Positions 5,355 to 28,460 of a stretch of 64,000 bases of DNA are shown piece after piece; position 1 is the first letter of the stretch; every line of letters starts with the position of its first letter. The notes under the pieces are model-generated. The model did not search any database, had not been told where the DNA came from, and worked only from the letters and a program-made list of their open reading frames with translations. A program made the translations under genes and the position numbers. The stretch spans positions 248,001 to 312,000 of the IMG/VR virus record IMGVR_UViG_3300044796_000657. The stretch is one strand, 5' to 3'.

Positions 5355-5606
5355 TCACTCTTTTTTCATAGCATCTTTATATTGCTTTGTTCTCTTGCAA
5401 CTAGAACACGTAACGGCACTAGCCAAACAACTGTGCTGAATAAGATTGCCGTGCTTACGGAAATCGTTATAGCTTGACATGTCCGGAGCCGTATAGATCG
5501 TGTCACCGCAAATAAAAGTCCCACAAGCTGTAAAATCAGATAAAGCGTAATGGACTGTAATTTTTGGTTCGATTGCTGCCTTCTTAACCTTCATAATAAT
5601 TCTCAC
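5355..5606 (-). CDS. Hypothetical Cys/His-containing protein
   Basis: 83-aa ORF coupled to the tyrS stop. Confidence 0.45.
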   Translation of the reverse strand: MRIIMKVKKAAIEPKITVHYALSDFTACGTFICGDTIYTAPDMSSYNDFRKHGNLIQHSCLASAVTCSSCKRTKQYKDAMKKE

Positions 5607-6760
5607 TGGAATACAATTGCGTACTTTCTGCCTACCCGTAAACGGCGACTAATGCCACCCGTCTCCATCTTAATTGCCAAGAATGGATCAATCACTTTTT
5701 CGCCGTCCAAATCCACGGCACCCTGAATAACCAAGCGACGGGCTTCATTGTTGCTAGTAGTCAAACCAGCAGCACAAATCAGCCTCATAAGCGTGGTGTC
5801 ATTCACCAAAACCTTAACTTCGGGAATGTCATCAGGCTCTTTGCGAAGACTGAATTGGTTAACCCATTGAACAGCCGCCGCCGCAGCCTTATCTGTACCA
5901 TGCATTGATTCTACAATACGAAGCGCAAGGGACTTTTTACTATCCAAAGGTGCGATCCAATCAATGCCATTCGTGAGCAAATCCACCCACTCTTGCATAA
6001 GTGTATCAGGAATGCTCATCACTTTACAGTACATTTCAAAAGGCTCTTCATCTACACCGATGTAGTTTCCGAGACTTTTGCCCATTTTCTTAACGCCGTC
6101 CATGCCCCGCAAGATCGGCAAAGTGATACAAACTTGCTGTTCCATACCAGCAAGTTTCTGCATATCACGGCCAAAATTCAAGTTAAACATCTGTTCTGTG
6201 CCGCCAAGTTCAACATCGGCAGCAACCATCACACTGTCGTACCCTTGTAGCATCGGGTACATCAACTCACTCACCTGAATAGGTTGTTCGGCTTTAAATC
6301 GATTGTTGAAATCCTCACGATCCAATATCTGACTGACTGTGAAGGTCTTAAGTTGCTCTAATGTCCATCGCAAATCGCATTTATTCAGCCAAGTACTGTT
6401 AAGATTGACTTCTGCCTTCTTGATGTCTACAACTTTACCAATTTGCTTCAAGTACTTCCGAGCATTATCCTTGGCTTCGTCAGGGGTGATTGAAGTGCTT
6501 CGAAGTTCATTTCTGCCTGTGGGATCGCCGATTGATGCCGTGAAGTCGCCCATAATGAGTACGGCAATATGTCCTTCATCTTGAAACGCCTTCATTAACC
6601 TCAATGGAACAGTATGTCCCAAGTGTACGTGCGGAGTGGTAGGATCAATGCCGTACTTGACACGCAAGGGACGACCCTTCTTCAGCTTCGCTTCCAAGGC
6701 GGGAACTTTTGAAGGGTCAAATTGCTTAACTTTTTCAAGTACCTTGCTCATATCATTCAT
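5603..6760 (-). CDS. tyrS: Tyrosyl-tRNA synthetase
   Basis: YGIDPTTPHVHLGH (HIGH), ELGGTEQMFN, KMGKSLGN (KMSKS) and a C-terminal S4 domain. Confidence 0.95.
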   Translation of the reverse strand: MNDMSKVLEKVKQFDPSKVPALEAKLKKGRPLRVKYGIDPTTPHVHLGHTVPLRLMKAFQDEGHIAVLIMGDFTASIGDPTGRNELRSTSITPDEAKDNARKYLKQIGKVVDIKKAEVNLNSTWLNKCDLRWTLEQLKTFTVSQILDREDFNNRFKAEQPIQVSELMYPMLQGYDSVMVAADVELGGTEQMFNLNFGRDMQKLAGMEQQVCITLPILRGMDGVKKMGKSLGNYIGVDEEPFEMYCKVMSIPDTLMQEWVDLLTNGIDWIAPLDSKKSLALRIVESMHGTDKAAAAAVQWVNQFSLRKEPDDIPEVKVLVNDTTLMRLICAAGLTTSNNEARRLVIQGAVDLDGEKVIDPFLAIKMETGGISRRLRVGRKYAIVFQ

Positions 6761-19808: not shown

Positions 19809-20612
19809 TTAGAAGTATTTTAGTGATGTAATCACAGTATCGATAATTTCATCTTTGTCTTGCGTTGGTGTGAAGAACGCATCCAAATACGGAATATCAA
19901 TTTCCCAATCGCCACCATCTTGTCCAATTGATACGGTGGACACAATCACGTGAATTAATCCACGTTTTTTATCGAAGTTAACATCTATTGTCGCTTCGGG
20001 TGTTTGTGTAACATTTCTAGTTCTACTTGCCAATTTTCCTACGCCCATGCCTCTAAGATTGAAATAAATGACGAAATAGTCTTTTCGTACTTCTTTGATG
20101 TCTTGAAAAATGTATAAATCGGGTGCGTGTGCCCTTACTCTTGCGCTCATCCTCTTAGCCAGATTGATGACTTCGCATTTCTCGGTTGCTACTTCTAATT
20201 GATCAAAATAAATTTTTTCTACTTGCTTGAAAACGTCGTCCGCTACAAACTCTTCTTTCCCTGCGTAATCTTTCAATTTTGGTTTGAATACGTTTTTGAG
20301 AATCCAAGTCGACGTACCTTCTAGGTCGGTAATGCGTCTTTCAACGAAAATGGTGATATTTGGCGTTAATTTAACTCTTACGGCTCCGGCATCTTTGCCG
20401 CCCCATACGACTTGATCTAAAAATGCATGACTTGAACGTATGCGATTGCCGATTTTCTTGTGTGCGAGAGTCCCCATCAGCCATTCGACGCTAAAGGGCT
20501 TGACCGGCATTTCGTCTTCTGCCGTATCATCCTCTGCGGCTAATACTTTCTTAGCTTCAAGATCATCGAAGCCAAATATGTCGCTTTCAAAATAACTCTT
20601 AAATACACCCAT
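19809..20612 (-). CDS. Hypothetical protein with capsid-targeting-like N-terminus
   Basis: MGVFKSYFE; TAAATA 6 nt upstream. Confidence 0.55.
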   Translation of the reverse strand: MGVFKSYFESDIFGFDDLEAKKVLAAEDDTAEDEMPVKPFSVEWLMGTLAHKKIGNRIRSSHAFLDQVVWGGKDAGAVRVKLTPNITIFVERRITDLEGTSTWILKNVFKPKLKDYAGKEEFVADDVFKQVEKIYFDQLEVATEKCEVINLAKRMSARVRAHAPDLYIFQDIKEVRKDYFVIYFNLRGMGVGKLASRTRNVTQTPEATIDVNFDKKRGLIHVIVSTVSIGQDGGDWEIDIPYLDAFFTPTQDKDEIIDTVITSLKYF

Positions 20613-20618
20613 CCTATA

Positions 20619-20624
20619 TATTTA
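20619..20624 (-). promoter_or_regulatory. TAAATA late-promoter-like box
   Basis: TAAATA-tatagg-ATG(20612). Confidence 0.5.
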
Positions 20625-20667
20625 CTCCTAATGGTTCATTTCTATGTACACATCGTAAAGGCTAAAA

Positions 20668-20952
20668 ATGAAATTCCGTGATTTTGTAAGGTTAAAAGAA
20701 GGCGTTGATTTATCAGACATCCGTGATATGATTTTGAGAGCGATAGGCGGCAACCCCGAAAGTCACGAGGCGTTTAATGCTCCGCTCACTCAGTTTGTAG
20801 AACCGGGGGATTTGGTCAACCGACTTAATTCACTAAAGGGACTCGCTGACCTAATCAAAGATAATGCTTCGGCAATTGATGCGATACAGAACGCACAGAC
20901 CAACAATTTAACTGTTGGACAATTGGCCGTGATTTTGACACGACAAGGATAA
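20668..20952 (+). CDS. Small protein with capsid-targeting-like N-terminus
   Basis: MKFRDFVRLKE. Confidence 0.55.
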   Translation: MKFRDFVRLKEGVDLSDIRDMILRAIGGNPESHEAFNAPLTQFVEPGDLVNRLNSLKGLADLIKDNASAIDAIQNAQTNNLTVGQLAVILTRQG

Positions 20953-20955
20953 CAA

Positions 20956-21189
20956 ATGCTCAATTCCGAACTTTCATTGTACGAAGGTATGCACGTGAAA
21001 ATTCAAGCGACTAATTATGGAATCGGACCTGAAACCATTGTTAAGGGAAAGTTGCGGTTTTCGGGTTCTACAAAACGTTGGTTCGTTGAAAGAACGGGCG
21101 TCTACGCCAATTTTACGTCGATGGAAATCAGCAAAATTGATCTTTGGACTCCCCAATACGAAGTTGAGATATTAAAGGAGACTCACTAA
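20956..21189 (+). CDS. Array paralog 1 of 6 (small beta-rich, Sm/SH3-like?)
   Basis: MLNSEL..Y.G..VKI...GKLRF...YEVEIL. Confidence 0.65.
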   Translation: MLNSELSLYEGMHVKIQATNYGIGPETIVKGKLRFSGSTKRWFVERTGVYANFTSMEISKIDLWTPQYEVEILKETH

Positions 21190-21407
21190 TGACCAATGCA
21201 GAATTGAAAATACTTCGCAATAAACGGGTCGAAGTTAAGTTTAGCGACCGAAGTAGTGCTGCCGGTACTACTCGCAAGGGTCTTTTGACGTACAATTATG
21301 ATCGTGAGCGATGGATGGTCGGTTCAAAATCGTTCTATCTCGACGACATTGAAACCGTTGTCAAAATACAGCCGTACGTAGTGGAGATTCTTGATGAAGC
21401 CAATTAG
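21189..21407 (+). CDS. Array paralog 2 of 6
   Basis: NKRVEV...GLLTY...VVEILD. Confidence 0.65.
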   Translation: MTNAELKILRNKRVEVKFSDRSSAAGTTRKGLLTYNYDRERWMVGSKSFYLDDIETVVKIQPYVVEILDEAN

Positions 21408-21618
21408 CCTCAAACCATTTCTCAATAAGCGAGTTGAAATTACGAGAATTCCATTAACGGTGGATGATCCTCGCACTGTTAGAGGCCGATTAAGCTACAA
21501 GAAGTCCGATCCTTATGGGTATTTTCGCATAGACAACACAGCATATTGCTCGTTCCGAGTCACTTCTATCAAACTAGCACCGGCAATTAGCGTGGAGATT
21601 CTCGATGCTCAAGAGTGA
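21394..21618 (+). CDS. Array paralog 3 of 6
   Basis: ATG at 21394 after GGAG-7nt; NKRVEI...GRLSY...SVEILD. Confidence 0.65.
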   Translation: MKPISLKPFLNKRVEITRIPLTVDDPRTVRGRLSYKKSDPYGYFRIDNTAYCSFRVTSIKLAPAISVEILDAQE

Positions 21619-21832
21619 GTTCAAGCCATATGTTGGCAAAAAAGTTATTCTCCATAGAGGCGTGTTCAATGGTGTCCAATTGCCGCCTTCTACTGGTGTA
21701 ATAACTACCACAAAGATTCAACTTATCAATTATTATTACATCAATGGAATGGCCTTTAATGTTTCCAATGTAACAAGTGTTGAAGTTGTCAAACCAAAGC
21801 TAACTGTGGAGATCCTTGATGTATACCAGTGA
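21605..21832 (+). CDS. Array paralog 4 of 6
   Basis: GKKVIL...GVIT...TVEILD. Confidence 0.65.
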   Translation: MLKSEFKPYVGKKVILHRGVFNGVQLPPSTGVITTTKIQLINYYYINGMAFNVSNVTSVEVVKPKLTVEILDVYQ

Positions 21833-22031
21833 AATAATACCCTACTTGAATAAAAAGGTAGCTATCGTTTGCTATAAATTTGGCATACCTATGAATTACA
21901 CGGGCGTATTGACAATGAGCGACGACTCTTATGGCTATTGTCACATTGATAAGTCTCCCCACTGCATCAAATACATCACTCAAATTAAGTTAAAATCATC
22001 CATCAAAGTAGAGATTCTCGATGTTGATTAA
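21819..22031 (+). CDS. Array paralog 5 of 6
   Basis: ATG at 21819; NKKVAI...GVLTM...KVEILD. Confidence 0.65.
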   Translation: MYTSEIIPYLNKKVAIVCYKFGIPMNYTGVLTMSDDSYGYCHIDKSPHCIKYITQIKLKSSIKVEILDVD

Positions 22032-22269
22032 CGAAATTATTCCTTTTAGCGGCCAAAAAGTCATAGTGACATGTATTAAGTATAAAGTTTCAGGTATCAT
22101 GCAGCAACCTTACAAGCTTTATGGTACCGAATACGTTGTAGTACAAAAAGACAATTTGTTCCACTATAACTTGCGTTTAGGAAATATAGTTTCCATTGAA
22201 CCACAACCATCAAAATACAAAGTGGAGATTTTAGATGAATCTCAATACGCTGCCAATCAGCATAGTTAA
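22021..22269 (+). CDS. Array paralog 6 of 6
   Basis: GQKVIV...GIM...KVEILD; its 3' end overlaps the PheRS start. Confidence 0.65.
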   Translation: MLINEIIPFSGQKVIVTCIKYKVSGIMQQPYKLYGTEYVVVQKDNLFHYNLRLGNIVSIEPQPSKYKVEILDESQYAANQHS

Positions 22270-23260
22270 CAAGATGGGAAAGAACCTTCATCAAAAAAAG
22301 GATCACCCATTACAAAAACTCCAAAAACGTATCACAAGTCTCTTCACAGACTTCAAAATCTTTGATCAAGTTTATCCAGTAGTATCGGTTGAGGATAACT
22401 TCGACCGCCTTTTGGTACCACACAATCACCCGTCACGCAGCCCTAGCGACACTTACTATCTGGACAATAAAGAAGTCCTTCGTACTCATACTTCAGCACA
22501 CCAACACCAGTTGCTTCGCCGTGGAAACAAAAAGTTCCTAGTGGTGGGTGATGTTTACCGCAAGGATGAAATCGATAGGAACCATTATCCCGTCTTTCAC
22601 CAGATTGAAGGCGTTTGCATCTATCCGGATGATGAGCGGGAAGTTGAAGAAAAACTCCATCATCATATTTACGATGTTATGAGTGATTTGTTCCCCAACA
22701 TGCCAACACGTCGATTAAAAAGCAGTTTCCCCTTCACTCATCCGTCGTGGGAATACGAGGTTTTCTTTAAGCAGAACTGGTTAGAGATTTTGGGTTGTGG
22801 TATCATCCAGCCAGAAATTTTGAAATCTGCCGAAGTTAAAGGTAAAGGTTGGGCATTCGGCATGGGATTGGAACGCCTAGCGATGGCATTGTATGACATT
22901 CCCGATATTCGTTACTTCTGGTCAGATGATCCGAGAACCACAGACCAGTTCAAGGATATGGGCGACGACTTCAAATTCAAACCGTACAGCCTCCATCCAT
23001 CATGCTATAAGGATATTGCGTTTTGGCTTAAGGGGGAATTTAATACGGGCGAATTCTTTCAAATGATACGTGATGAAGGCCAAGACCTTATCGAAAGAGT
23101 TGTCAAAACGGACACCTACACCAGAGAAGACGGCAAAACAAGTATATGTTACCGTATCTTCTACTGCTCAATGGATAGGACGCTGACAAACGAAGAGATT
23201 GATACTATCCAATTCAGAATACGCAAAAGAATGAGCGATTTTAACGTGGAGCTAAGATGA
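22235..23260 (+). CDS. pheS: Monomeric (organellar-type) phenylalanyl-tRNA synthetase: catalytic domain plus FDX-ACB
   Basis: HPSR..SDTYY, VLRTHTSAHQ, GDVYRKDEIDRNHYPVFHQIEG, FPFTHPSWE, WLEILGCG, GWAFGMGLERLAM; C-terminal YKDIAFW...SICYRI.Y...RTLTNEEI. Confidence 0.92.
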   Translation: MNLNTLPISIVNKMGKNLHQKKDHPLQKLQKRITSLFTDFKIFDQVYPVVSVEDNFDRLLVPHNHPSRSPSDTYYLDNKEVLRTHTSAHQHQLLRRGNKKFLVVGDVYRKDEIDRNHYPVFHQIEGVCIYPDDEREVEEKLHHHIYDVMSDLFPNMPTRRLKSSFPFTHPSWEYEVFFKQNWLEILGCGIIQPEILKSAEVKGKGWAFGMGLERLAMALYDIPDIRYFWSDDPRTTDQFKDMGDDFKFKPYSLHPSCYKDIAFWLKGEFNTGEFFQMIRDEGQDLIERVVKTDTYTREDGKTSICYRIFYCSMDRTLTNEEIDTIQFRIRKRMSDFNVELR

Positions 23261-23439
23261 ACTGCAAACTCTGCGATGGACTTGGCATGGTCGCCCGCCC
23301 CTATGACGAAACATTGGGGTTTTGGGAGGACTGCCCATTATGCATCAAACCAGTTAAGGTTCAAAGGCCGCCTTATGGCTTGTTAATATTTTTCTTTGTC
23401 GTTATTGTTACGATTTTCTTGTACAGCATGGGGAAATGA
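23257..23439 (+). CDS. Small CxxC zinc-finger protein with C-terminal TM helix
   Basis: CKLCDGLG...CPLC followed by a hydrophobic tail. Confidence 0.5.
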   Translation: MNCKLCDGLGMVARPYDETLGFWEDCPLCIKPVKVQRPPYGLLIFFFVVIVTIFLYSMGK

Positions 23440-23672
23440 TCATGATCGATGCATTCGGCCAACCAATCGGCCTTATAACACTTTGCTGCCGAGGCACCAA
23501 AGGAAGCGGCGGCACGGTTTACAATGGAGGGGTGGTAATTAAAGTGTTTGAGCAGACACACACAAGCCCAGACAGAGTTACTGTTGAAGTCAAACAAACA
23601 AGTGCTCGTCATGGAATAACGCCTTCAAACCCAATCCTTTACGCAAGTAATGTTGTTGTTTTACCGCAATAA
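23436..23672 (+). CDS. Hypothetical protein
   Basis: 78 aa, coupled by ATGA overlap. Confidence 0.45.
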   Translation: MIMIDAFGQPIGLITLCCRGTKGSGGTVYNGGVVIKVFEQTHTSPDRVTVEVKQTSARHGITPSNPILYASNVVVLPQ

Positions 23673-23693
23673 TAAACATTAAGGTGTTTTACA

Positions 23694-25043
23694 ATGGAAC
23701 TGCAAAACCTCCTTGGAAGCAACCAGTTTTTCTCTGGTGGCTTAGTGTTAATGGTGTTAGGTGGGCTACTCGCCTACTTCAGACACCTTCCAGCCAAGCT
23801 CTACGCCTTCTTTGAACGATTCTTCATCTTGAAGATTGACATTCAAGACGAAGACGAAGCCTATCAATGGATGCAGGTTTGGCTTGCTGACAGGCTCAAA
23901 CACGCACTTTCTATCTCCGTTATTACCAAACGAAAAAACGAACTTCGAGACTTTTCCGAAGACGAGTACATCACCAAACCCAAGTCGCAAATCTACTTCG
24001 TTCCGGCAGTAGGTACCTACTTCTTCTGGTATAAGAATAGGTTCGTTACACTTAACAGATCCCGTCAAGAGAATACCACCGGCGGAAACATGTTAAGTTC
24101 CACTGGTACTGGACTCACTAGCGCCAGAGCAAAAGAGTCCTTCACATTCAGAGTTTTTTCCCGCAACAAAGAGATTGCTACGTCGCTCATTACCGAAGCC
24201 CGTGACATGGCCGTACCAGAAGACGGCAAACTGGAAATCCGTGTCGCTTCATGGGCACAATGGCGTACCGGTACCAGAATCAAACCGAGAGACTTGGAGT
24301 CTGTCATTTTGGCGGGCGATAAGGTCGTGGAAATCGCTGCGGTCATCAAGGAATTCTTGGATAGTCGTGACTGGTACGAAAAAGTCGGTGTTCCTTACCG
24401 TCTATCCTTCTTGTTCAAAGGCCCGCCCGGTAATGGCAAGACAACTGCCGCCAAAGCCTTGGGTGGCTACTTCGGCATGAACATCCACGTTCTCGTTTTA
24501 TCTGATCCAGATTTGAACGACAACAAAATCACCGAGCTTCTCTCTAACGTACCCGAAGGCAGTATCGTATTGTTGGAGGATATTGATTGTGCTTTCAATC
24601 AACGTAATAGGGTTGGGAAAGATGGCGGCTTAACATTCAGCGGATTGTTAAATGCTATTGATGGTGTGGCGAGTAGTGAAGGTCGTATTCTCATTATGAC
24701 GACTAATCACGTTGAGAATCTTGATTCTGCCCTCATCCGTCCCGGCAGAGCTGACAAACACTATACGTTCGGCAATGCTACGGGGGAACAGGCTACCAAG
24801 CTCTACAATCGTTTCTTCCCCGGCAACGTCAAGATGGGGGAAGAGTTTGGAAAATTGGTACCAAATGAAGTCTATAGTATGGCCGTACTTCAATGTTACT
24901 TGATGTCATATCGCCATCAACCGTATGAAGCGGTTGTTAACATTGCTAAAATTGCGGATATACAAGCGAACATGATTCCATTACCACCCGAATCACCGCC
25001 TGAACCTGACTCGGTGTCATTGTCGGAAAAATCGGAAGACTAA
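23694..25043 (+). CDS. BCS1-like membrane-anchored AAA+ ATPase
   Basis: N-terminal TM (NQFFSGGLVLMVLG), AYQWMQVWL, FVPAVGTYFFWYKNR, WY..VGVPYR, GPPGNGKT, LLEDIDCAF, LTFSGLLNAIDGV.S.EGRI, ALIRPGRAD. Confidence 0.88.
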   Translation: MELQNLLGSNQFFSGGLVLMVLGGLLAYFRHLPAKLYAFFERFFILKIDIQDEDEAYQWMQVWLADRLKHALSISVITKRKNELRDFSEDEYITKPKSQIYFVPAVGTYFFWYKNRFVTLNRSRQENTTGGNMLSSTGTGLTSARAKESFTFRVFSRNKEIATSLITEARDMAVPEDGKLEIRVASWAQWRTGTRIKPRDLESVILAGDKVVEIAAVIKEFLDSRDWYEKVGVPYRLSFLFKGPPGNGKTTAAKALGGYFGMNIHVLVLSDPDLNDNKITELLSNVPEGSIVLLEDIDCAFNQRNRVGKDGGLTFSGLLNAIDGVASSEGRILIMTTNHVENLDSALIRPGRADKHYTFGNATGEQATKLYNRFFPGNVKMGEEFGKLVPNEVYSMAVLQCYLMSYRHQPYEAVVNIAKIADIQANMIPLPPESPPEPDSVSLSEKSED

Positions 25044-26064
25044 TGAGTTTGTCTTTTAAGTCGAAAGCAACCGGGGTATGAGTACCCATATACATTGTCG
25101 TGCTTCCGATGAGGTTTGGATAATGGTATCCGTAAGCGATACTGTTTTTGTTAAGATCACTCGCTAACTGATTTCTTTCTTCGAGGGATTCACATTTGAA
25201 TTCGTAGAGGTGATAAATGTGTCGGCTATTGGGTTGTTGGACAGGACAACGCCCAATGCCGAATATTTCATTGTACAAGTTGGCAATCGCACGTCTTCTA
25301 TCATTCCAATTATCCAATCTGTCCAGCGCATGAAAGAGTTGCGCAGCCACGATACTGTCTAATCGATAATTCCCGCCAAGACAAATATGCTCGTATTTTT
25401 CAATGCTGCCCTGATTGGCAATAATGCGAATTCTTTTTGCTAATGCTGAATCGTTGGTGATAACAGCACCACCTTGACCGCAACCGCCAAGGTTTTTCGC
25501 TGGATAGAACGAAGTTGATGCTGCGTGAGAGTAATATCCTACCGACTTCTTTTGGTACGTTGCGCCAATGGATTGCGCCGCATCCTCCAACAGATAAACC
25601 TTATGTTTCTGGCAAAGTTCGTACAGTGCTTCCATGTTCGGCATTTGGCCATACAAGTTAACTGCTAAGACTGCTTTGATATGATGTCGTTTGTTATTCT
25701 TGAGTTTTTCTTCTACGGCATCGTAATCAATGAGATAGGTGTAAGGATTGACATCAACTAGGACTGGTTTGGCTCCGGCTCTTGATACACCGAATGCCGA
25801 AGCGATAAACGAATTATTAGGGACTATGACAGAATCACCCTTACCTATGTCCAAACCCTCGCAAATCAATTGTATCGCATCTGTACCGTTACTGACGCCG
25901 ACTACGTGATCGATGTCTAAATAGTTTGCTAAGGATCTTTCAAATCTATCTAGGAAATGTCCACCAACGTAACTTCCGTGTCTCAAAACGTGTAAAACAT
26001 CACGCTCTACACCATCGGCAATTTCAGCGTGTTGTCCGGATAGGTCTACAAAAGGTACGCTCAT
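24946..26064 (-). CDS. DegT/DnrJ/EryC1/StrS PLP aminotransferase (WbpE/WlbC-like)
   Basis: VPFVDL, SNGTDAI, LLEDAAQSIGA, SFYPAKNLGGCGQGG, GGNYRLD, ISLPIFP. Confidence 0.92.
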   Translation of the reverse strand: MSVPFVDLSGQHAEIADGVERDVLHVLRHGSYVGGHFLDRFERSLANYLDIDHVVGVSNGTDAIQLICEGLDIGKGDSVIVPNNSFIASAFGVSRAGAKPVLVDVNPYTYLIDYDAVEEKLKNNKRHHIKAVLAVNLYGQMPNMEALYELCQKHKVYLLEDAAQSIGATYQKKSVGYYSHAASTSFYPAKNLGGCGQGGAVITNDSALAKRIRIIANQGSIEKYEHICLGGNYRLDSIVAAQLFHALDRLDNWNDRRRAIANLYNEIFGIGRCPVQQPNSRHIYHLYEFKCESLEERNQLASDLNKNSIAYGYHYPNLIGSTTMYMGTHTPVAFDLKDKLISLPIFPTMTPSQVQAVIRVVMESCSLVYPQF

Positions 26065-26999
26065 GTTTTTGCTTCTTTACTGTAAGTATCCTCTATTATT
26101 TTGACGACTTCCGCACCGACTTGTCCGTTGGATATGAAGGGTGTGTTATTGTTTAACGAGTCACGGAATTCTTCAAAGAGAACTTGGAGTGGTTCACGGC
26201 ACTCGCCTTGGTATTCTGACACCCAATTGAACGAATGCAGCCAAGCTTTTTCGCTTTTGGATGCTTTCTTGTCGTAAATTTTGATTGGTTTATCGGCCAA
26301 CATATCGTACTCGATCATACCTTCCGTTCCGATAACGGTTGTAGTTCTCACTTTTTTCGGGTATAACCAACTCATGCTGATAGCGTAAGTGGAATCCTTA
26401 TACTTGAGTTCTACTGCCGCCGTATCTATCACGTTCTTATCTAAGTGTCGCAAAAATTTAACTGATTCGACAGTTGGTATATCGTTCATTAGATAATTAG
26501 CCATTGCGATGTCGTGGGGCATCAAATCCCAGACTACCCCGCTATCCTGAAACTTGCCCAAGTTCTGACGGAAGCTATCAATGCGGAGTACTTTTCCGAT
26601 CTTGCCTTGTTCAATCAATGCTCTAATGGTTCTAATATGATCAGAAAATAAAAATGTATGGTCGACGCCGATTTTTATGTTATAATCCTTAGATGCTTGA
26701 TTGAGTAATACAGCTTCTTCGGAATTAACCGTCATCGGCTTTTCAATAAGAACGTGTTTATGGGCTTTGATAGCCTCCATTGCCAGATCGTAATGGGTAC
26801 TCGGCGGCGTTGCGATCACAACGACATCGCAATACGTCCAAGCATCTGATAATTTGTTGAAGGTTGGAATTGGTACATCTGAACGCTCGGCGTCGATATC
26901 GACACGTGCTGTCAGTTTGATGCCATCAACTTTGGAAATGGCACGAACGAGATTTTGTGCCCAATAACCTTTGAACCCAACCAAGCATATATTGATCAT
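26061..26999 (-). CDS. Gfo/Idh/MocA NAD-dependent oxidoreductase (WbpB/WlbA-like)
   Basis: LVGFKGYWAQN, VIATPPSTH, HVLIEKPMT, VWDLMPHDI. Confidence 0.9.
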   Translation of the reverse strand: MINICLVGFKGYWAQNLVRAISKVDGIKLTARVDIDAERSDVPIPTFNKLSDAWTYCDVVVIATPPSTHYDLAMEAIKAHKHVLIEKPMTVNSEEAVLLNQASKDYNIKIGVDHTFLFSDHIRTIRALIEQGKIGKVLRIDSFRQNLGKFQDSGVVWDLMPHDIAMANYLMNDIPTVESVKFLRHLDKNVIDTAAVELKYKDSTYAISMSWLYPKKVRTTTVIGTEGMIEYDMLADKPIKIYDKKASKSEKAWLHSFNWVSEYQGECREPLQVLFEEFRDSLNNNTPFISNGQVGAEVVKIIEDTYSKEAKT

Positions 27000-27124
27000 T
27001 TAATAATCTAATGAAATTACGAAAATTATTTTATCAAGTTTCAACTTTTGAGTCGTTCGTTCCGTAATACTATTGTGAACAAATCGTTCGCATAACATTA
27101 CAAACTTTATAGGAAACCATACAA

Positions 27125-28060
27125 ATGGCTATTGACTTAGGTACTTTACAACAAGAATTCACGAGAATTGGCACACAAGGCGGCGGTTCATCTAACTTTT
27201 TAGATAACTTCGTTCCGATGCCAGAAGGCGAAGGCAGTATCGTTCTGCGATTACTTCCCCCCACAGAAGGTCTTAACGGCTTACCCTGTGCTAGAACTCG
27301 CACTCACAAATTGAATAATAAGACATTTCACTCACCTCTCCAACTTGTAAATGGTAAATGGCTCGGCAACTGCCCCATTAACAATTACTATCGTTCGCTG
27401 TGGAAGCAATCAGAAACTGCATCTGCCGAAGAAGCTAAGGCACTCCAAGCGGAAGCCCGAAGCATCAAGCCCGTAGAACGCTATTACTTCAATGCGATTA
27501 TTCGTTCAGCGACGAGCAAGAGCGGCGAAACCCTTCACAATGTCGGCCCGAAGATTTACTCTTGTGGCAAGCAAGTTTGGGAAAAGATTCTCCGTGCGAT
27601 TATCGGTGCTCCTGAAGTAGATGAACCGGGATTGGGCGATATTACCGATCTGCATACTGGTCGGGACTTCAAGATCATCAAGAGATTAGTTAAGAGTGGT
27701 TCGGAAGCATATCCAAACTACACCGAATCTAAGTTCTTGGCTCCTTCGGCTGCTGGTACGGAAGCCGACATTGCTGCTTGGATGGCAAATCGCCACAACC
27801 TCGCATCCTTGATTACGGTCAAGACCTTCGATGAATTGGCCAAAGAAGTCAGAGTTCACCGTGGATTGGAAAAAGATCCTGATCTGGCTTTTGATGGTGG
27901 TACGCCAACGCCTGTCGTTGAAACCCGTGCCCAACCACAAGCTCCACGGAACGTAGCTCCTCAGCGTCCAGTAGTCGCCCCTCAACCGGTTGCTGCTGTT
28001 AACGATGATGAAGACTTCGGTGTCGGTGATGAATTCTTCCAGAAGCTAAGGAACCTGTAA
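27125..28060 (+). CDS. T4 gp32-like single-stranded DNA-binding protein
   Basis: VLRLLPP, CPI.NYY..LWK, RYYFNAI, KIYSCGKQVWEKI, GRDFKIIK, YPNY.ES.F and an acidic tail. Confidence 0.85.
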   Translation: MAIDLGTLQQEFTRIGTQGGGSSNFLDNFVPMPEGEGSIVLRLLPPTEGLNGLPCARTRTHKLNNKTFHSPLQLVNGKWLGNCPINNYYRSLWKQSETASAEEAKALQAEARSIKPVERYYFNAIIRSATSKSGETLHNVGPKIYSCGKQVWEKILRAIIGAPEVDEPGLGDITDLHTGRDFKIIKRLVKSGSEAYPNYTESKFLAPSAAGTEADIAAWMANRHNLASLITVKTFDELAKEVRVHRGLEKDPDLAFDGGTPTPVVETRAQPQAPRNVAPQRPVVAPQPVAAVNDDEDFGVGDEFFQKLRNL

Positions 28061-28061
28061 G

Positions 28062-28460
28062 ATGAAGTTGAGCTACACAATATTGGTAGACTCATCAATC
28101 ATCAAGGACGAAACCAACAAAAATACCGCTGTTGAAGTTACTGCTCAATTAAGTGCAACTCCCGATAGAACATGGACTAGCTTGTTTGCGGGAGAAGCTT
28201 CACGACTTTTGAGTTATGACAAACATACACATGGTTTTGTGGGTAATGATGGTCTAATCATTTTGACATTGCCTCTTACGGATCGTTGGCTTGATAATGT
28301 GAATGATTATCTTTCAAAGGTGATCAACACTACCAACAGTGCTTATGCGGCTTGGCAAACGGAAGCTAATAGAATAATTGCTGCCGTCAAACAAATTACG
28401 AATGAAAATCGCAAAATGTTTGAAGTAGGCAAATCTTCCCGAAAAAATATTAATGATTAA
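28062..28460 (+). CDS. Hypothetical protein
   Basis: 132-aa ORF in operon. Confidence 0.5.
   Translation: MKLSYTILVDSSIIKDETNKNTAVEVTAQLSATPDRTWTSLFAGEASRLLSYDKHTHGFVGNDGLIILTLPLTDRWLDNVNDYLSKVINTTNSAYAAWQTEANRIIAAVKQITNENRKMFEVGKSSRKNIND

What the first reader, a model, noticed from the sequence alone, without database searches (positions are those of the whole stretch)
20956..22269. Six-paralog gene array chained by a 16-nt element that is C-terminus, RBS and next start codon at once
Seen: six divergent 70-82 aa paralogs (pattern NK/GK-x-V-x-I/V...G-x-L-x-Y/F...VEIL). Five junctions (21381, 21592, 21806, 22008, 22222) read GTRGAGATYYTHGATG. This encodes VEILD in gene n, holds the GGAG SD (AGAG in one copy) 7 nt before an ATG, and that ATG starts gene n+1. 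The last copy starts pheS. Inference: the VEILD conservation may be driven by the translational-coupling element. The element could act as a recombination hotspot, allowing an accordion-like array of diversified small beta-barrel (Sm/Hfq- or SH3-like) proteins co-translated with PheRS, perhaps as RNA binders or anti-defence decoys.
Basis: partly seen in the sequence, partly recalled or inferred. Interest (0 to 1): 0.76.

Follow-up and report, generated by a model that had tools for sequence, protein, structure and literature searches.

The report
Six chained Sm-like phage genes
A huge peat-soil phage carries six old, strongly diverged copies of a small Sm-like barrel gene directly in front of its phenylalanyl-tRNA synthetase gene; the conserved tail of each copy (VEILD) also serves as ribosome-binding site and start codon for the next gene, which is a tidy but essentially ordinary case of overlapping, probably translationally coupled genes.

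Summary
Six overlapping ORFs (70-82 aa, 20956-22269) are true paralogs, and a 16-nt element (GTRGAGATYYTHGATG) sits at five junctions and nowhere else in the 430-kb phage genome. Codon statistics show dual coding. The rare codons GTG and GAG build a GGAG Shine-Dalgarno at this genome's modal 7-nt spacing. GAT-G supplies the ATG. The Ile and Leu codons vary freely, so VEIL is also kept at the protein level. AlphaFold and four independent fold searches place the proteins in the Sm/SH3-like small beta-barrel class, but only at fold level. VEIL lies in a tail outside the barrel. The family has no detectable homolog in 5.8 or 1.8 billion proteins. The two closest syntenic relatives carry unrelated genes in this slot, yet the same GGAGA-N6-7-ATG pheS initiation region is embedded in the upstream gene. 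I therefore read the junction as the pheS initiation region copied by start-to-start tandem duplication. The accordion or recombination-hotspot idea is not supported: nucleotide identity is 32-51%, the longest shared words are 7-13 nt, and three assemblies are identical. Protein function is untested. A second, unrelated chained array elsewhere in the genome shows the architecture recurs. Interest is modest.

The parts
20668..20952 (+). First gene of the operon (94 aa, no known family). It is conserved in relatives L013 and L018. Its stop lies 3 nt before copy 1.
20956..21189 (+). Paralog 1 (77 aa). It ends VEILKETH.
   Evidence: AF2 pLDDT 80.6
21163..21191 (+). Atypical junction 1 to 2. VEIL is encoded GTT GAG ATA TTA, followed by a separate AAGGAG (21175-21180), an 8-nt spacer and a TAATG stop/start overlap. 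It serves as a natural control for the other junctions.
21189..21407 (+). Paralog 2 (72 aa)
21381..21396 (+). Junction element GTGGAGATTCTTGATG. It encodes VEILD of copy 2 and holds GGAG, a 7-nt spacer and the ATG of copy 3.
21394..21618 (+). Paralog 3 (74 aa)
21592..21607 (+). Junction element GTGGAGATTCTCGATG (copy 3 to 4)
21605..21832 (+). Paralog 4 (75 aa)
21806..21821 (+). Junction element GTGGAGATCCTTGATG (copy 4 to 5)
21819..22031 (+). Paralog 5 (70 aa). It gives the best-modelled copy: a helix plus five strands, with the VEIL tail outside the barrel.
22008..22023 (+). Junction element GTAGAGATTCTCGATG (copy 5 to 6). The SD is weakened to AGAG while Val is kept.
22021..22269 (+). Paralog 6 (82 aa). 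It overlaps pheS by 35 nt.
22222..22237 (+). Junction element GTGGAGATTTTAGATG (copy 6 to pheS). The same GGAGA-N6-7-ATG initiation region precedes pheS in relatives L013 and L018, inside an unrelated upstream gene.
22225..22243 (+). Possible 7-bp hairpin covering part of the SD and the G of the pheS ATG. It is not beyond chance (z -1.1 to -1.8).
22235..23260 (+). pheS: single-chain, organelle-type PheRS (tRNA-synt_2d plus FDX-ACB, 341 aa).
23257..23439 (+). 60-aa gene (Cys-rich plus a hydrophobic tail). It has an ATGA overlap with pheS.
23436..23672 (+). 78-aa gene with an ATGA-type overlap with the previous gene.
23694..25043 (+). BCS1-like AAA+ ATPase, the last gene of the tightly packed + strand block. 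It is conserved next to pheS in L013.

Best explanation
The region is one tightly packed operon (20668-25043) of a huge phage (430 kb or more). It contains a lineage-specific, old tandem expansion of an orphan gene for a roughly 70-aa Sm/SH3-like small beta-barrel protein, placed directly before a monomeric PheRS gene.

The 16-nt junction element is a translation-initiation region embedded in the last codons of the preceding copy. It consists of GGAG, a 7-nt spacer, and an ATG inside GAT-G.

The element is dual-coded:
- RNA-level selection fixes the third base of Val (G), the Glu codon (GAG) and the Asp codon (GAT).
- Protein-level selection keeps Val, Ile and Leu, which form a conserved tail outside the barrel.

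Most likely origin (inferred): an ancestral pheS initiation region already sat inside the upstream gene. Start-to-start tandem duplication then copied it to every junction.

Most likely working (inferred, not shown): ribosomes finishing copy n re-initiate at, or expose, the start of copy n+1 8-11 nt upstream of the stop. The six proteins and PheRS would then be made from one mRNA in fixed proportions. The proteins are probably diversified small binding modules for RNA or protein that share one tail-mediated contact.
For: The element and its codons:
- It occurs only at the five junctions.
- The rare codons GTG (17% genome-wide) and GAG (21%) are used in 4 of 5 and 6 of 6 copies. GAT is used in 5 of 5. 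The joint probability is about 3e-7.
- Elsewhere in the same six genes, Glu is GAA 17 times and GAG 4 times, and Asp is GAT 7 and GAC 7.
- The invariant V14 and G31 have scrambled codons, so synonymous sites are otherwise saturated.
- Genome-wide, GGAG upstream of long ORFs peaks at 5-8 nt with a mode of 7. An SD core occurs before 26% of starts against a 4.4% background.

Protein-level selection on the tail:
- Ile and Leu codons vary only at synonymous sites.
- Copy 1 keeps VEIL with the common GTT codon and has its own AAGGAG further down.

Origin:
- Relatives L013 and L018 (PheRS 55-56% identical, same flanking genes) carry an unrelated DUF4177-like gene before pheS. Its C-terminus (LVILEKDQ and LIILEKSDGS) also holds GGAGA 7-8 nt before the pheS ATG. 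In L018 the frame and the GAT-G are the same as here.

Operon:
- No promoter or terminator signal above chance inside the array.
- All junctions from 20668 to 23694 are 21 nt or less.
- One contig from an RNA library spans 20415-22768.

Fold:
- AF2 gives pLDDT 80.6 and 88.1, with an N-terminal helix plus five strands.
- A search of 48,161 PDB chains that does not rely on Foldseek returns almost only Sm-fold proteins: YaeO Z 7.1, RimP C-domain, Hfq, SmAP, LSm, WYL, Gemin6.

Literature:
- SD motifs inside the upstream gene are the rule at overlapping gene pairs, and such pairs are coupled and enriched for complex subunits (PMC6728339, PMC10666635).
Against: - Coupling itself is not shown.
- The SD core is only 4 nt, and AGAG in one copy.
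- Overlaps of 11-35 nt are longer than the -1 and -4 overlaps for which termination-reinitiation was demonstrated.
- No significant RNA structure masks the starts, so plain de novo initiation at each gene is equally possible.
- The RNA evidence comes from assembled contigs of an unstranded-by-contig library with flat depth. It cannot exclude DNA carry-over.
- There is only one genome with the array, so synonymous-site conservation cannot be tested in orthologs. Shared ancestry of the copies could contribute to the codon pattern.
- Fold matches are all below Z 8 or above Foldseek E 0.01, so they hold at fold level only.
- The protein function is a guess.
Confidence: 0.62

Rival explanations
1. 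There is no coupling. Each gene is initiated de novo at its own internal SD, and the overlaps are only genome compaction inherited from duplication.
For: No structure sequesters the starts. GGAG sits at the genome's normal spacing. SD-preceded overlaps of 8-14 nt occur at other places in this genome.
Against: Overlapping same-strand pairs with intragenic SD were coupled in nearly all tested cases (PMC6728339). Ribosomes translating copy n necessarily pass over the start of copy n+1. Sequence alone cannot separate this rival from the main explanation.
Confidence: 0.2
2. This is the first reader's strong form: VEILD is conserved only because it is the RNA element, and the peptide itself is irrelevant.
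For: VEIL lies outside the predicted barrel in a low-confidence tail in both models. It is the only invariant block besides M1, V14 and G31. Unrelated upstream proteins in relatives also end in hydrophobic-Glu-rich tails at the pheS start.
Against: The three variable spacer positions are exactly the synonymous ones, and every change is silent. Val is kept when the SD base is lost (GTA in copy 5, GTT in copy 1). Copy 1 keeps VEIL 20 nt from the next ATG. A spacer has no known need for AT-Y-Y-T-H.
Confidence: 0.1
3. The array is an active genomic accordion, and the element is a recombination hotspot that changes copy number.
For: The phage encodes a UvsX-like recombinase. The five elements share 8-13 identical bases. 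The array must once have grown by duplication.
Against: Copies are 32-51% identical in DNA and TRF finds no repeat. There are no joints or indels in the DNA or RNA-library contigs. Three assemblies are identical. No array was found in 2 syntenic relatives or in the other 43 viral or metagenomic PheRS loci examined.
Confidence: 0.05
4. A prfB-like programmed +1 frameshift operates at the junction, with the SD 3 nt before a CUU codon. It would fuse successive barrels into multidomain proteins.
For: GGAG-AUU-CUU has the SD-to-slip-codon spacing of the RF2 site (own knowledge). Each next gene is in the +1 frame.
Against: The would-be slippery codon is CTT, CTC, CTT, CTC, TTA, so it is not conserved. 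No stop or rare codon follows it. At the pheS junction the +1 frame reads TAG just before the ATG. Every copy has its own ATG at the modal SD distance.
Confidence: 0.03

Closest known systems
Overlapping same-strand gene pairs with an intragenic Shine-Dalgarno, coupled by termination-reinitiation (Huber et al., PMC6728339 and PMC10666635; review PMC12548453)
   Same: The SD and start of the downstream gene lie inside the 3' end of the upstream gene. The genes share a strand, form a tight operon, and are expected to give fixed stoichiometry.
   Different: Overlaps here are 11-35 nt rather than the usual 1 or 4 nt. The same element is repeated five times in series and coincides with the one conserved peptide of a paralog family. 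Coupling has not been measured here.
Sm/LSm/Hfq-like small beta-barrels, including RimP C-domain, YaeO (Rof), WYL and Gemin6
   Same: The predicted N-terminal helix plus five bent strands matches. These proteins fill the top of every structural search.
   Different: No Sm1/Sm2 motifs and no Pfam, NCBIfam or PDB sequence match. Z is 7.1 or less. Ring formation and RNA binding are unknown. The conserved hydrophobic-acidic C-terminal tail has no counterpart.
T4 family of LSm-like fold early proteins GoF, MotB.1 and Frd.2 (PMC12152347)
   Same: Several small phage proteins with very dissimilar sequences share a predicted LSm-like fold. Their function is unclear and possibly RNA-related.
   Different: The paper does not describe those T4 genes as a chained array. 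Here the six are adjacent, overlapping and recognisably paralogous.
Poxvirus-type gene accordions (own knowledge)
   Same: Tandem copies of one gene in a viral genome.
   Different: Accordion copies are near-identical and vary in number between genomes. These copies are 18-39% identical in protein and identical in number in all assemblies seen.
Second chained array in the same phage (G000:C1:24740-28097)
   Same: About eleven adjacent small paralogs. A conserved C-terminal [LM]-E-L motif has a TTG/CTG/ATG-GAG that supplies GGAG 5-8 nt before the next start. Overlaps are 4-11 nt.
   Different: It is an unrelated family (hhalign probability 0.3%). It has a conserved MNLNK N-terminus, more heterogeneous junctions, some fused two-domain members, and is not next to an aaRS.

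Membership tests
Translationally coupled overlapping gene pair (termination-reinitiation type) | Same-strand neighbours whose stop and start overlap or lie within a few nt | tested here: met
   Overlaps are 1, 14, 14, 14, 11 and 35 nt. These are longer than the typical -1 and -4.
Translationally coupled overlapping gene pair (termination-reinitiation type) | SD motif for the downstream gene inside the 3' end of the upstream gene at a functional distance | tested here: met
   GGAG (once AGAG) lies 7 nt before the ATG, which is the genome's modal spacing. The codon bias has p of about 3e-7.
Translationally coupled overlapping gene pair (termination-reinitiation type) | Translation of the downstream gene depends on translation of the upstream gene | not testable with these tools
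   This needs reporter fusions with premature stops, or ribosome profiling.
Sm/LSm/Hfq superfamily | N-terminal helix followed by a five-stranded, strongly bent antiparallel sheet | tested here: met
   AF2 models: helix at 3-9, then five strands (pLDDT 88.1 and 80.6). The top structural neighbours are Sm-fold proteins. These are predictions only, with Z below 8.
Sm/LSm/Hfq superfamily | Sequence membership (Sm1/Sm2 motifs; Pfam LSM, Hfq or related models) | tested here: not met
   No Pfam, PHROG, NCBIfam or PDB-sequence hit at a meaningful E-value. The only link is an indirect weak chain through a 172-aa ORF elsewhere in the genome.
Sm/LSm/Hfq superfamily | Ring oligomer and RNA binding | not testable with these tools
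   No multimer prediction or assay was available.
Viral gene accordion / recombination hotspot | Near-identical tandem copies offering long homology | tested here: not met
   32-51% nucleotide identity, longest shared word 7-13 nt, and no TRF array.
Viral gene accordion / recombination hotspot | Copy number differs between genomes or reads | tested here: inconclusive
   Three assemblies are identical. No joints were seen, but only contigs were available, and contigs hide rare variants. Relatives lack the family altogether.
prfB-type programmed +1 frameshift site | SD-like element 3 nt upstream of the slip codon | tested here: met
   GGAG-AUU-CUU geometry is visible in the sequence.
prfB-type programmed +1 frameshift site | Conserved slippery codon followed by a slowly decoded (stop) codon | tested here: not met
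   The codon is CTT/CTC/TTA and is followed by GAT. At the pheS junction TAG is in the +1 frame just before the pheS ATG.
Monomeric organelle-type PheRS (for the downstream gene) | Class II core (tRNA-synt_2d) and FDX-ACB anticodon-binding domain in one chain of about 340 aa | tested here: met
   Pfam E-values are 6e-55 and 4e-18. It is 50-56% identical to thousands of such proteins, many on huge-phage contigs.

The most novel reading that the evidence does not exclude
The six Sm-like paralogs assemble into one hetero-hexameric ring, a phage-encoded heteromeric Hfq/LSm analogue. Serial translational coupling would supply equimolar subunits, and the shared VEIL tail would dock each subunit onto its neighbour. 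The ring would act on RNA, for example tRNA or mRNA, during infection. My evidence neither shows nor excludes this. In its favour are six copies, the Sm-like fold, the tight chain of overlaps, and a conserved tail outside the monomer fold.
Probability: 0.08. Interest if true: 0.75.

Novelty: new member of a known kind. Interest (0 to 1): 0.3.

Why it matters
The array is a clean natural example of dual coding. Within one 16-nt stretch one can see which bases are held by the ribosome-binding function (third base of Val, GAG, GAT) and which by the peptide (Val, Ile, Leu). Copy 1 acts as an internal control. It also suggests a simple rule: start-to-start tandem duplication of a gene that overlaps its neighbour's initiation region produces a self-chaining array. 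The rule is seen twice in this phage. The protein family is an orphan with an Sm-like fold in a huge phage that also encodes two aaRSs, 37 tRNAs and a tmRNA. It adds to the growing list of small LSm-like phage proteins of unknown role. None of this overturns current understanding.

Tried and rejected
Searches for relatives:
- A pattern search with the six-protein alignment failed because no stretch was conserved enough.
- The single-protein PheRS search of viral contigs found nothing close.
- The conserved 267-aa neighbour gave only L013 again plus a distant, non-syntenic locus, L016.

Protein hits rejected:
- The exhaustive profile search gave five non-self hits (Tudor repeats, cadherin-like repeats and others). 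All are multi-stretch repeat proteins with inflated summed scores, so I rejected them as homologs.
- Sub-threshold Pfam and PHROG hits (DUF7246, phrog_2283, Chalcone_N) were not pursued. Each is an isolated hit to a single member.

DNA pattern search:
- A pattern of two chained junctions found nothing in viral contigs. It found three hits in 596 Gb of genomes.
- At least one Gammaproteobacteria locus is a PepSY protein with repeated YEVEILDA[DE]G (L021; the second, L022, was not inspected). One is an assembly duplicate with Ns. None is related.

Comparisons and signals:
- hhalign of the family against the relatives' DUF4177-like protein and against the second array was negative.
- RNA folding of all junctions gave no structure beyond shuffles.
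- The promoter and terminator scan was at chance level.
- The tandem pair before pheS in L055 is a zinc-finger repeat on the other strand of an AT-rich giant-virus-like contig.

Other ideas dropped:
- Phe-codon attenuation, as with the pheST leader. By eye the copies hold one to three Phe each, so they are not Phe-rich.
- Stop-codon recoding. All three stop codons end genes, and coding density is normal with the standard code.

Full report
WHERE THE WINDOW LIES. The window is bases 248001-312000 of a 430,229-bp IMG/VR virus record. The record is labelled provirus, with 97% estimated completeness. It was cut from a 614,480-bp JGI peat-metagenome contig. The genome is 43% GC. It encodes 37 tRNAs including tRNA-Phe, plus a tmRNA, and a large terminase. 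In the window it encodes DnaB, Pol A, gp32, a UvsX-like recombinase, a TyrRS and the PheRS discussed here. It is therefore a huge phage of the kind described in PMC7162821.

THE OBSERVATION. Six ORFs of 77, 72, 74, 75, 70 and 82 aa run head to tail on the + strand from 20956 to 22269, and pheS starts at 22235. The 16-nt pattern matches five times in the window against 0.01 expected. It matches nowhere else in the genome on either strand. The repeat finder recovers the same five copies. Start-to-start distances are 233, 205, 211, 214, 202 and 214 nt. Overlaps are 1, 14, 14, 14, 11 and 35 nt, and each of the five element junctions moves to the +1 frame. Public gene callers called the same six genes. 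Only the annotated frame of each has a positive codon-usage score.

HOMOLOGY, TESTED WITHOUT CIRCULARITY. A profile of any five copies finds the sixth at E 1e-6 to 3e-13 among all 5,008 six-frame segments of the genome. With the VEIL tail removed, E is 7.5e-9 to 0.024. Copies 1, 2 and 4 are then only marginal. Identity is 18-39% in protein and 32-51% in DNA.

WHAT THE ELEMENT IS. Genome-wide, GGAG upstream of long ORFs peaks at a spacing of 5-8 nt with a mode of 7. An SD core is found before 26% of crude starts against a 4.4% background. The junction has GGAG, exactly 7 nt, then ATG.

- Val is GTG in 4 of 5 junctions (17% genome-wide).
- Glu is GAG in all six copies (21% genome-wide; GAA 17 and GAG 4 elsewhere in these genes).
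- Asp is GAT in 5 of 5 (7 of 14 elsewhere).
- The joint probability is about 3e-7.
- The invariant V14 uses four different codons and G31 three. Synonymous sites are otherwise saturated, so inheritance alone is a poor explanation.

The Ile codons (ATA, ATT, ATC) and Leu codons (TTA, CTT, CTC) differ, always silently. Copy 5 keeps Val as GTA although that weakens the SD to AGAG. Copy 1 has a remodelled junction, with its own AAGGAG 8 nt before a TAATG overlap. It still ends in VEIL, now with the common GTT codon, and has Lys where the others need GAT-G. The stretch is therefore dual-coded. The SD and start fix three synonymous choices and probably the Asp. The peptide V-E-I-L is kept as protein.

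ORIGIN. No homolog of the family exists outside this phage, either in 5.8 billion clustered proteins or in an exhaustive HMMER pass over 1.84 billion representatives. The non-self hits there are repeat-inflated noise. Three assemblies hold the array and are 100% identical over 2.3-20 kb, so they are one population.

The two closest relatives I could find are L013 and L018. Their PheRS is 55-56% identical, their 267-aa neighbour is 64% identical in L013, and the flanking genes are the same. Both have the conserved 94-aa gene and pheS. Between these lie a peptide deformylase plus two small genes in L013, and a 49-aa membrane protein plus one small gene in L018. The gene just before pheS in both is a DUF4177-like protein unrelated to the six paralogs and absent from this genome.

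Yet its last codons also carry GGAGA 7-8 nt before the pheS ATG. In L018 the frame is the same and the ATG again sits inside GAT-G. So a pheS initiation region buried in the upstream gene is older than the array. Duplicating a unit that runs from one start codon to the next copies that region to every junction. This is inference, but it explains why the last element starts pheS.

Thirty-nine further viral PheRS loci, plus four more loci reached through PheRS homologs, contain no family member and no comparable array.

THE ACCORDION IDEA. The longest identical word shared by any two units is 7-13 nt. TRF sees no repeat. The DNA contig and the RNA-library contigs show no joint, indel or variant. 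The array is old and, as far as the data go, stable. Contigs cannot exclude rare variants.

EXPRESSION. From 20668 to 23694 every junction is 21 nt or less, and pheS and the two genes after it overlap by ATGA. No promoter or terminator signal exceeds chance. One contig from a metatranscriptome library covers 20415-22768, which is the 94-aa gene, all six copies and the 5' part of pheS. Depth is flat and DNA carry-over cannot be excluded.

No junction has RNA structure beyond shuffled controls. A 7-bp hairpin over the pheS SD and start reaches only z -1.1 to -1.8. Coupling is therefore plausible by analogy (PMC6728339, PMC10666635) but not shown. Plain de novo initiation is a live rival. SD-preceded overlaps of 8-14 nt occur elsewhere in this genome.

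THE PROTEINS. AlphaFold2, using the six-sequence alignment, gives pLDDT 80.6 for copy 1 and 88.1 for copy 5. Both models show a short N-terminal helix, five strands, and a low-confidence tail that holds VEIL. All structural searches agree on the class:
- Foldseek on PDB, AFDB clusters, Swiss-Prot models and viral models.
- The ESM Atlas structure search.
- VIA-align, both on Foldseek's candidates and on 48,161 PDB representatives without Foldseek.

The neighbours are YaeO/Rof (Z 7.1), RimP C-domain, Hfq, archaeal SmAP, LSm, Gemin6, WYL, the BirA C-domain and YolD. All scores are modest (Z below 8, Foldseek E 0.02 or higher). This is fold-level placement, not family membership, and no sequence model matches. 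A 172-aa ORF elsewhere in the genome matches the family profile weakly. Its N-terminal domain hits Sm-clan Pfam models just below threshold.

The conserved tail lies outside the monomer fold and is protein-selected. That points to an intermolecular contact, either with a common partner or with each other. pI ranges from 6.7 to 9.7. Function remains untested. The variable slot they occupy, and the unrelated genes there in relatives, argue against a dedicated PheRS partnership.

A SECOND ARRAY. Outside the window, at 24740-28097 of the genome, about eleven adjacent small ORFs all begin MNLNK. Most end in [LM]-E-L-x-x-E. The Leu/Met-GAG of that motif supplies GGAG 5-8 nt before the next start, and overlaps are 4-11 nt. 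This family is unrelated by hhalign. The architecture is thus a recurring by-product of tandem duplication in this phage, which lowers its singularity.

VERDICT. The coupling-element reading is supported at the sequence level, with the correction that the peptide is also selected. The fold guess is supported. The accordion reading is not supported, and the functional ideas are untested. In kind, this is a new orphan member of the Sm/SH3-like small barrels, arranged as a textbook overlapping operon. The serial dual-coded junction is a neat variant rather than a new mechanism.

Noticed in passing
G000:C1:24740-28097 (+), = L020:1741-5098 (outside the window): A second chained tandem array of about 11 small paralogs (58-186 aa). 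All start MNLNK[LI], and most end [LM]ELxxE(P). GGAG in the Leu/Met-Glu codons lies 5-8 nt before the next start. Some members appear to be two-domain fusions. The family is unrelated to the six paralogs.
   Followed up: partly
window 22235-22252: PheRS starts MNLNTL, which resembles the MNLNK start of the second array. It is 4-5 residues longer at the N-terminus than the PheRS of L013 and L018. Only one other ORF in the genome starts MNLN. This may be chance or a favoured start context.
   Followed up: partly
G000:C1:49457-49972 (-), = L007:1168-1683: A 172-aa ORF whose N-terminal ~65 residues weakly match the six-paralog profile (E about 0.01). They also hit Sm-clan Pfam models below threshold (DUF150_C 4.7e-4, LSM 0.024).
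   Followed up: partly
window 24946-25043: The BCS1-like AAA+ gene (+) and the DegT-type aminotransferase gene (-) converge and overlap by 98 nt. The gene calls for relative L013 show a similar convergent overlap.
   Followed up: no
window 23694-25043: A BCS1-like AAA+ ATPase (BCS1_N, AAA and BCS1 lid domains, a family best known from mitochondria) sits in a phage next to an organelle-type PheRS. It matches phrog_7485 strongly and is conserved in L013.
   Followed up: no
window 5603-6760 (-): A second aminoacyl-tRNA synthetase in the window: tyrosyl-tRNA synthetase (phrog_9270, E 2e-69).
   Followed up: no
G000:C1:399874-399948 and 131045-131411: ARAGORN calls a tRNA with a four-base anticodon (ggaa) right next to three tRNA-Thr genes. 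It also calls a phage tmRNA with tag VEPELRMAA. The junction sequences contain no TTCC, so I see no link to the array.
   Followed up: partly
L013:1225-1779: The closest relative carries a peptide deformylase in the slot that the six paralogs occupy here. In this clade the slot between the 94-aa gene and pheS is a gene-turnover hotspot with a translation-related flavour.
   Followed up: partly
window 21600-22400: GC drops to 0.35-0.37 over copies 4-6, against 0.43 for the genome.
   Followed up: no
L021:5501-6067: A Gammaproteobacteria PepSY-repeat protein repeats YEVEILDA[DE]G, encoded by the same 16-nt pattern at about 240-nt spacing. This is a coincidence of motif and codon use, not a relative.
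   Followed up: yes
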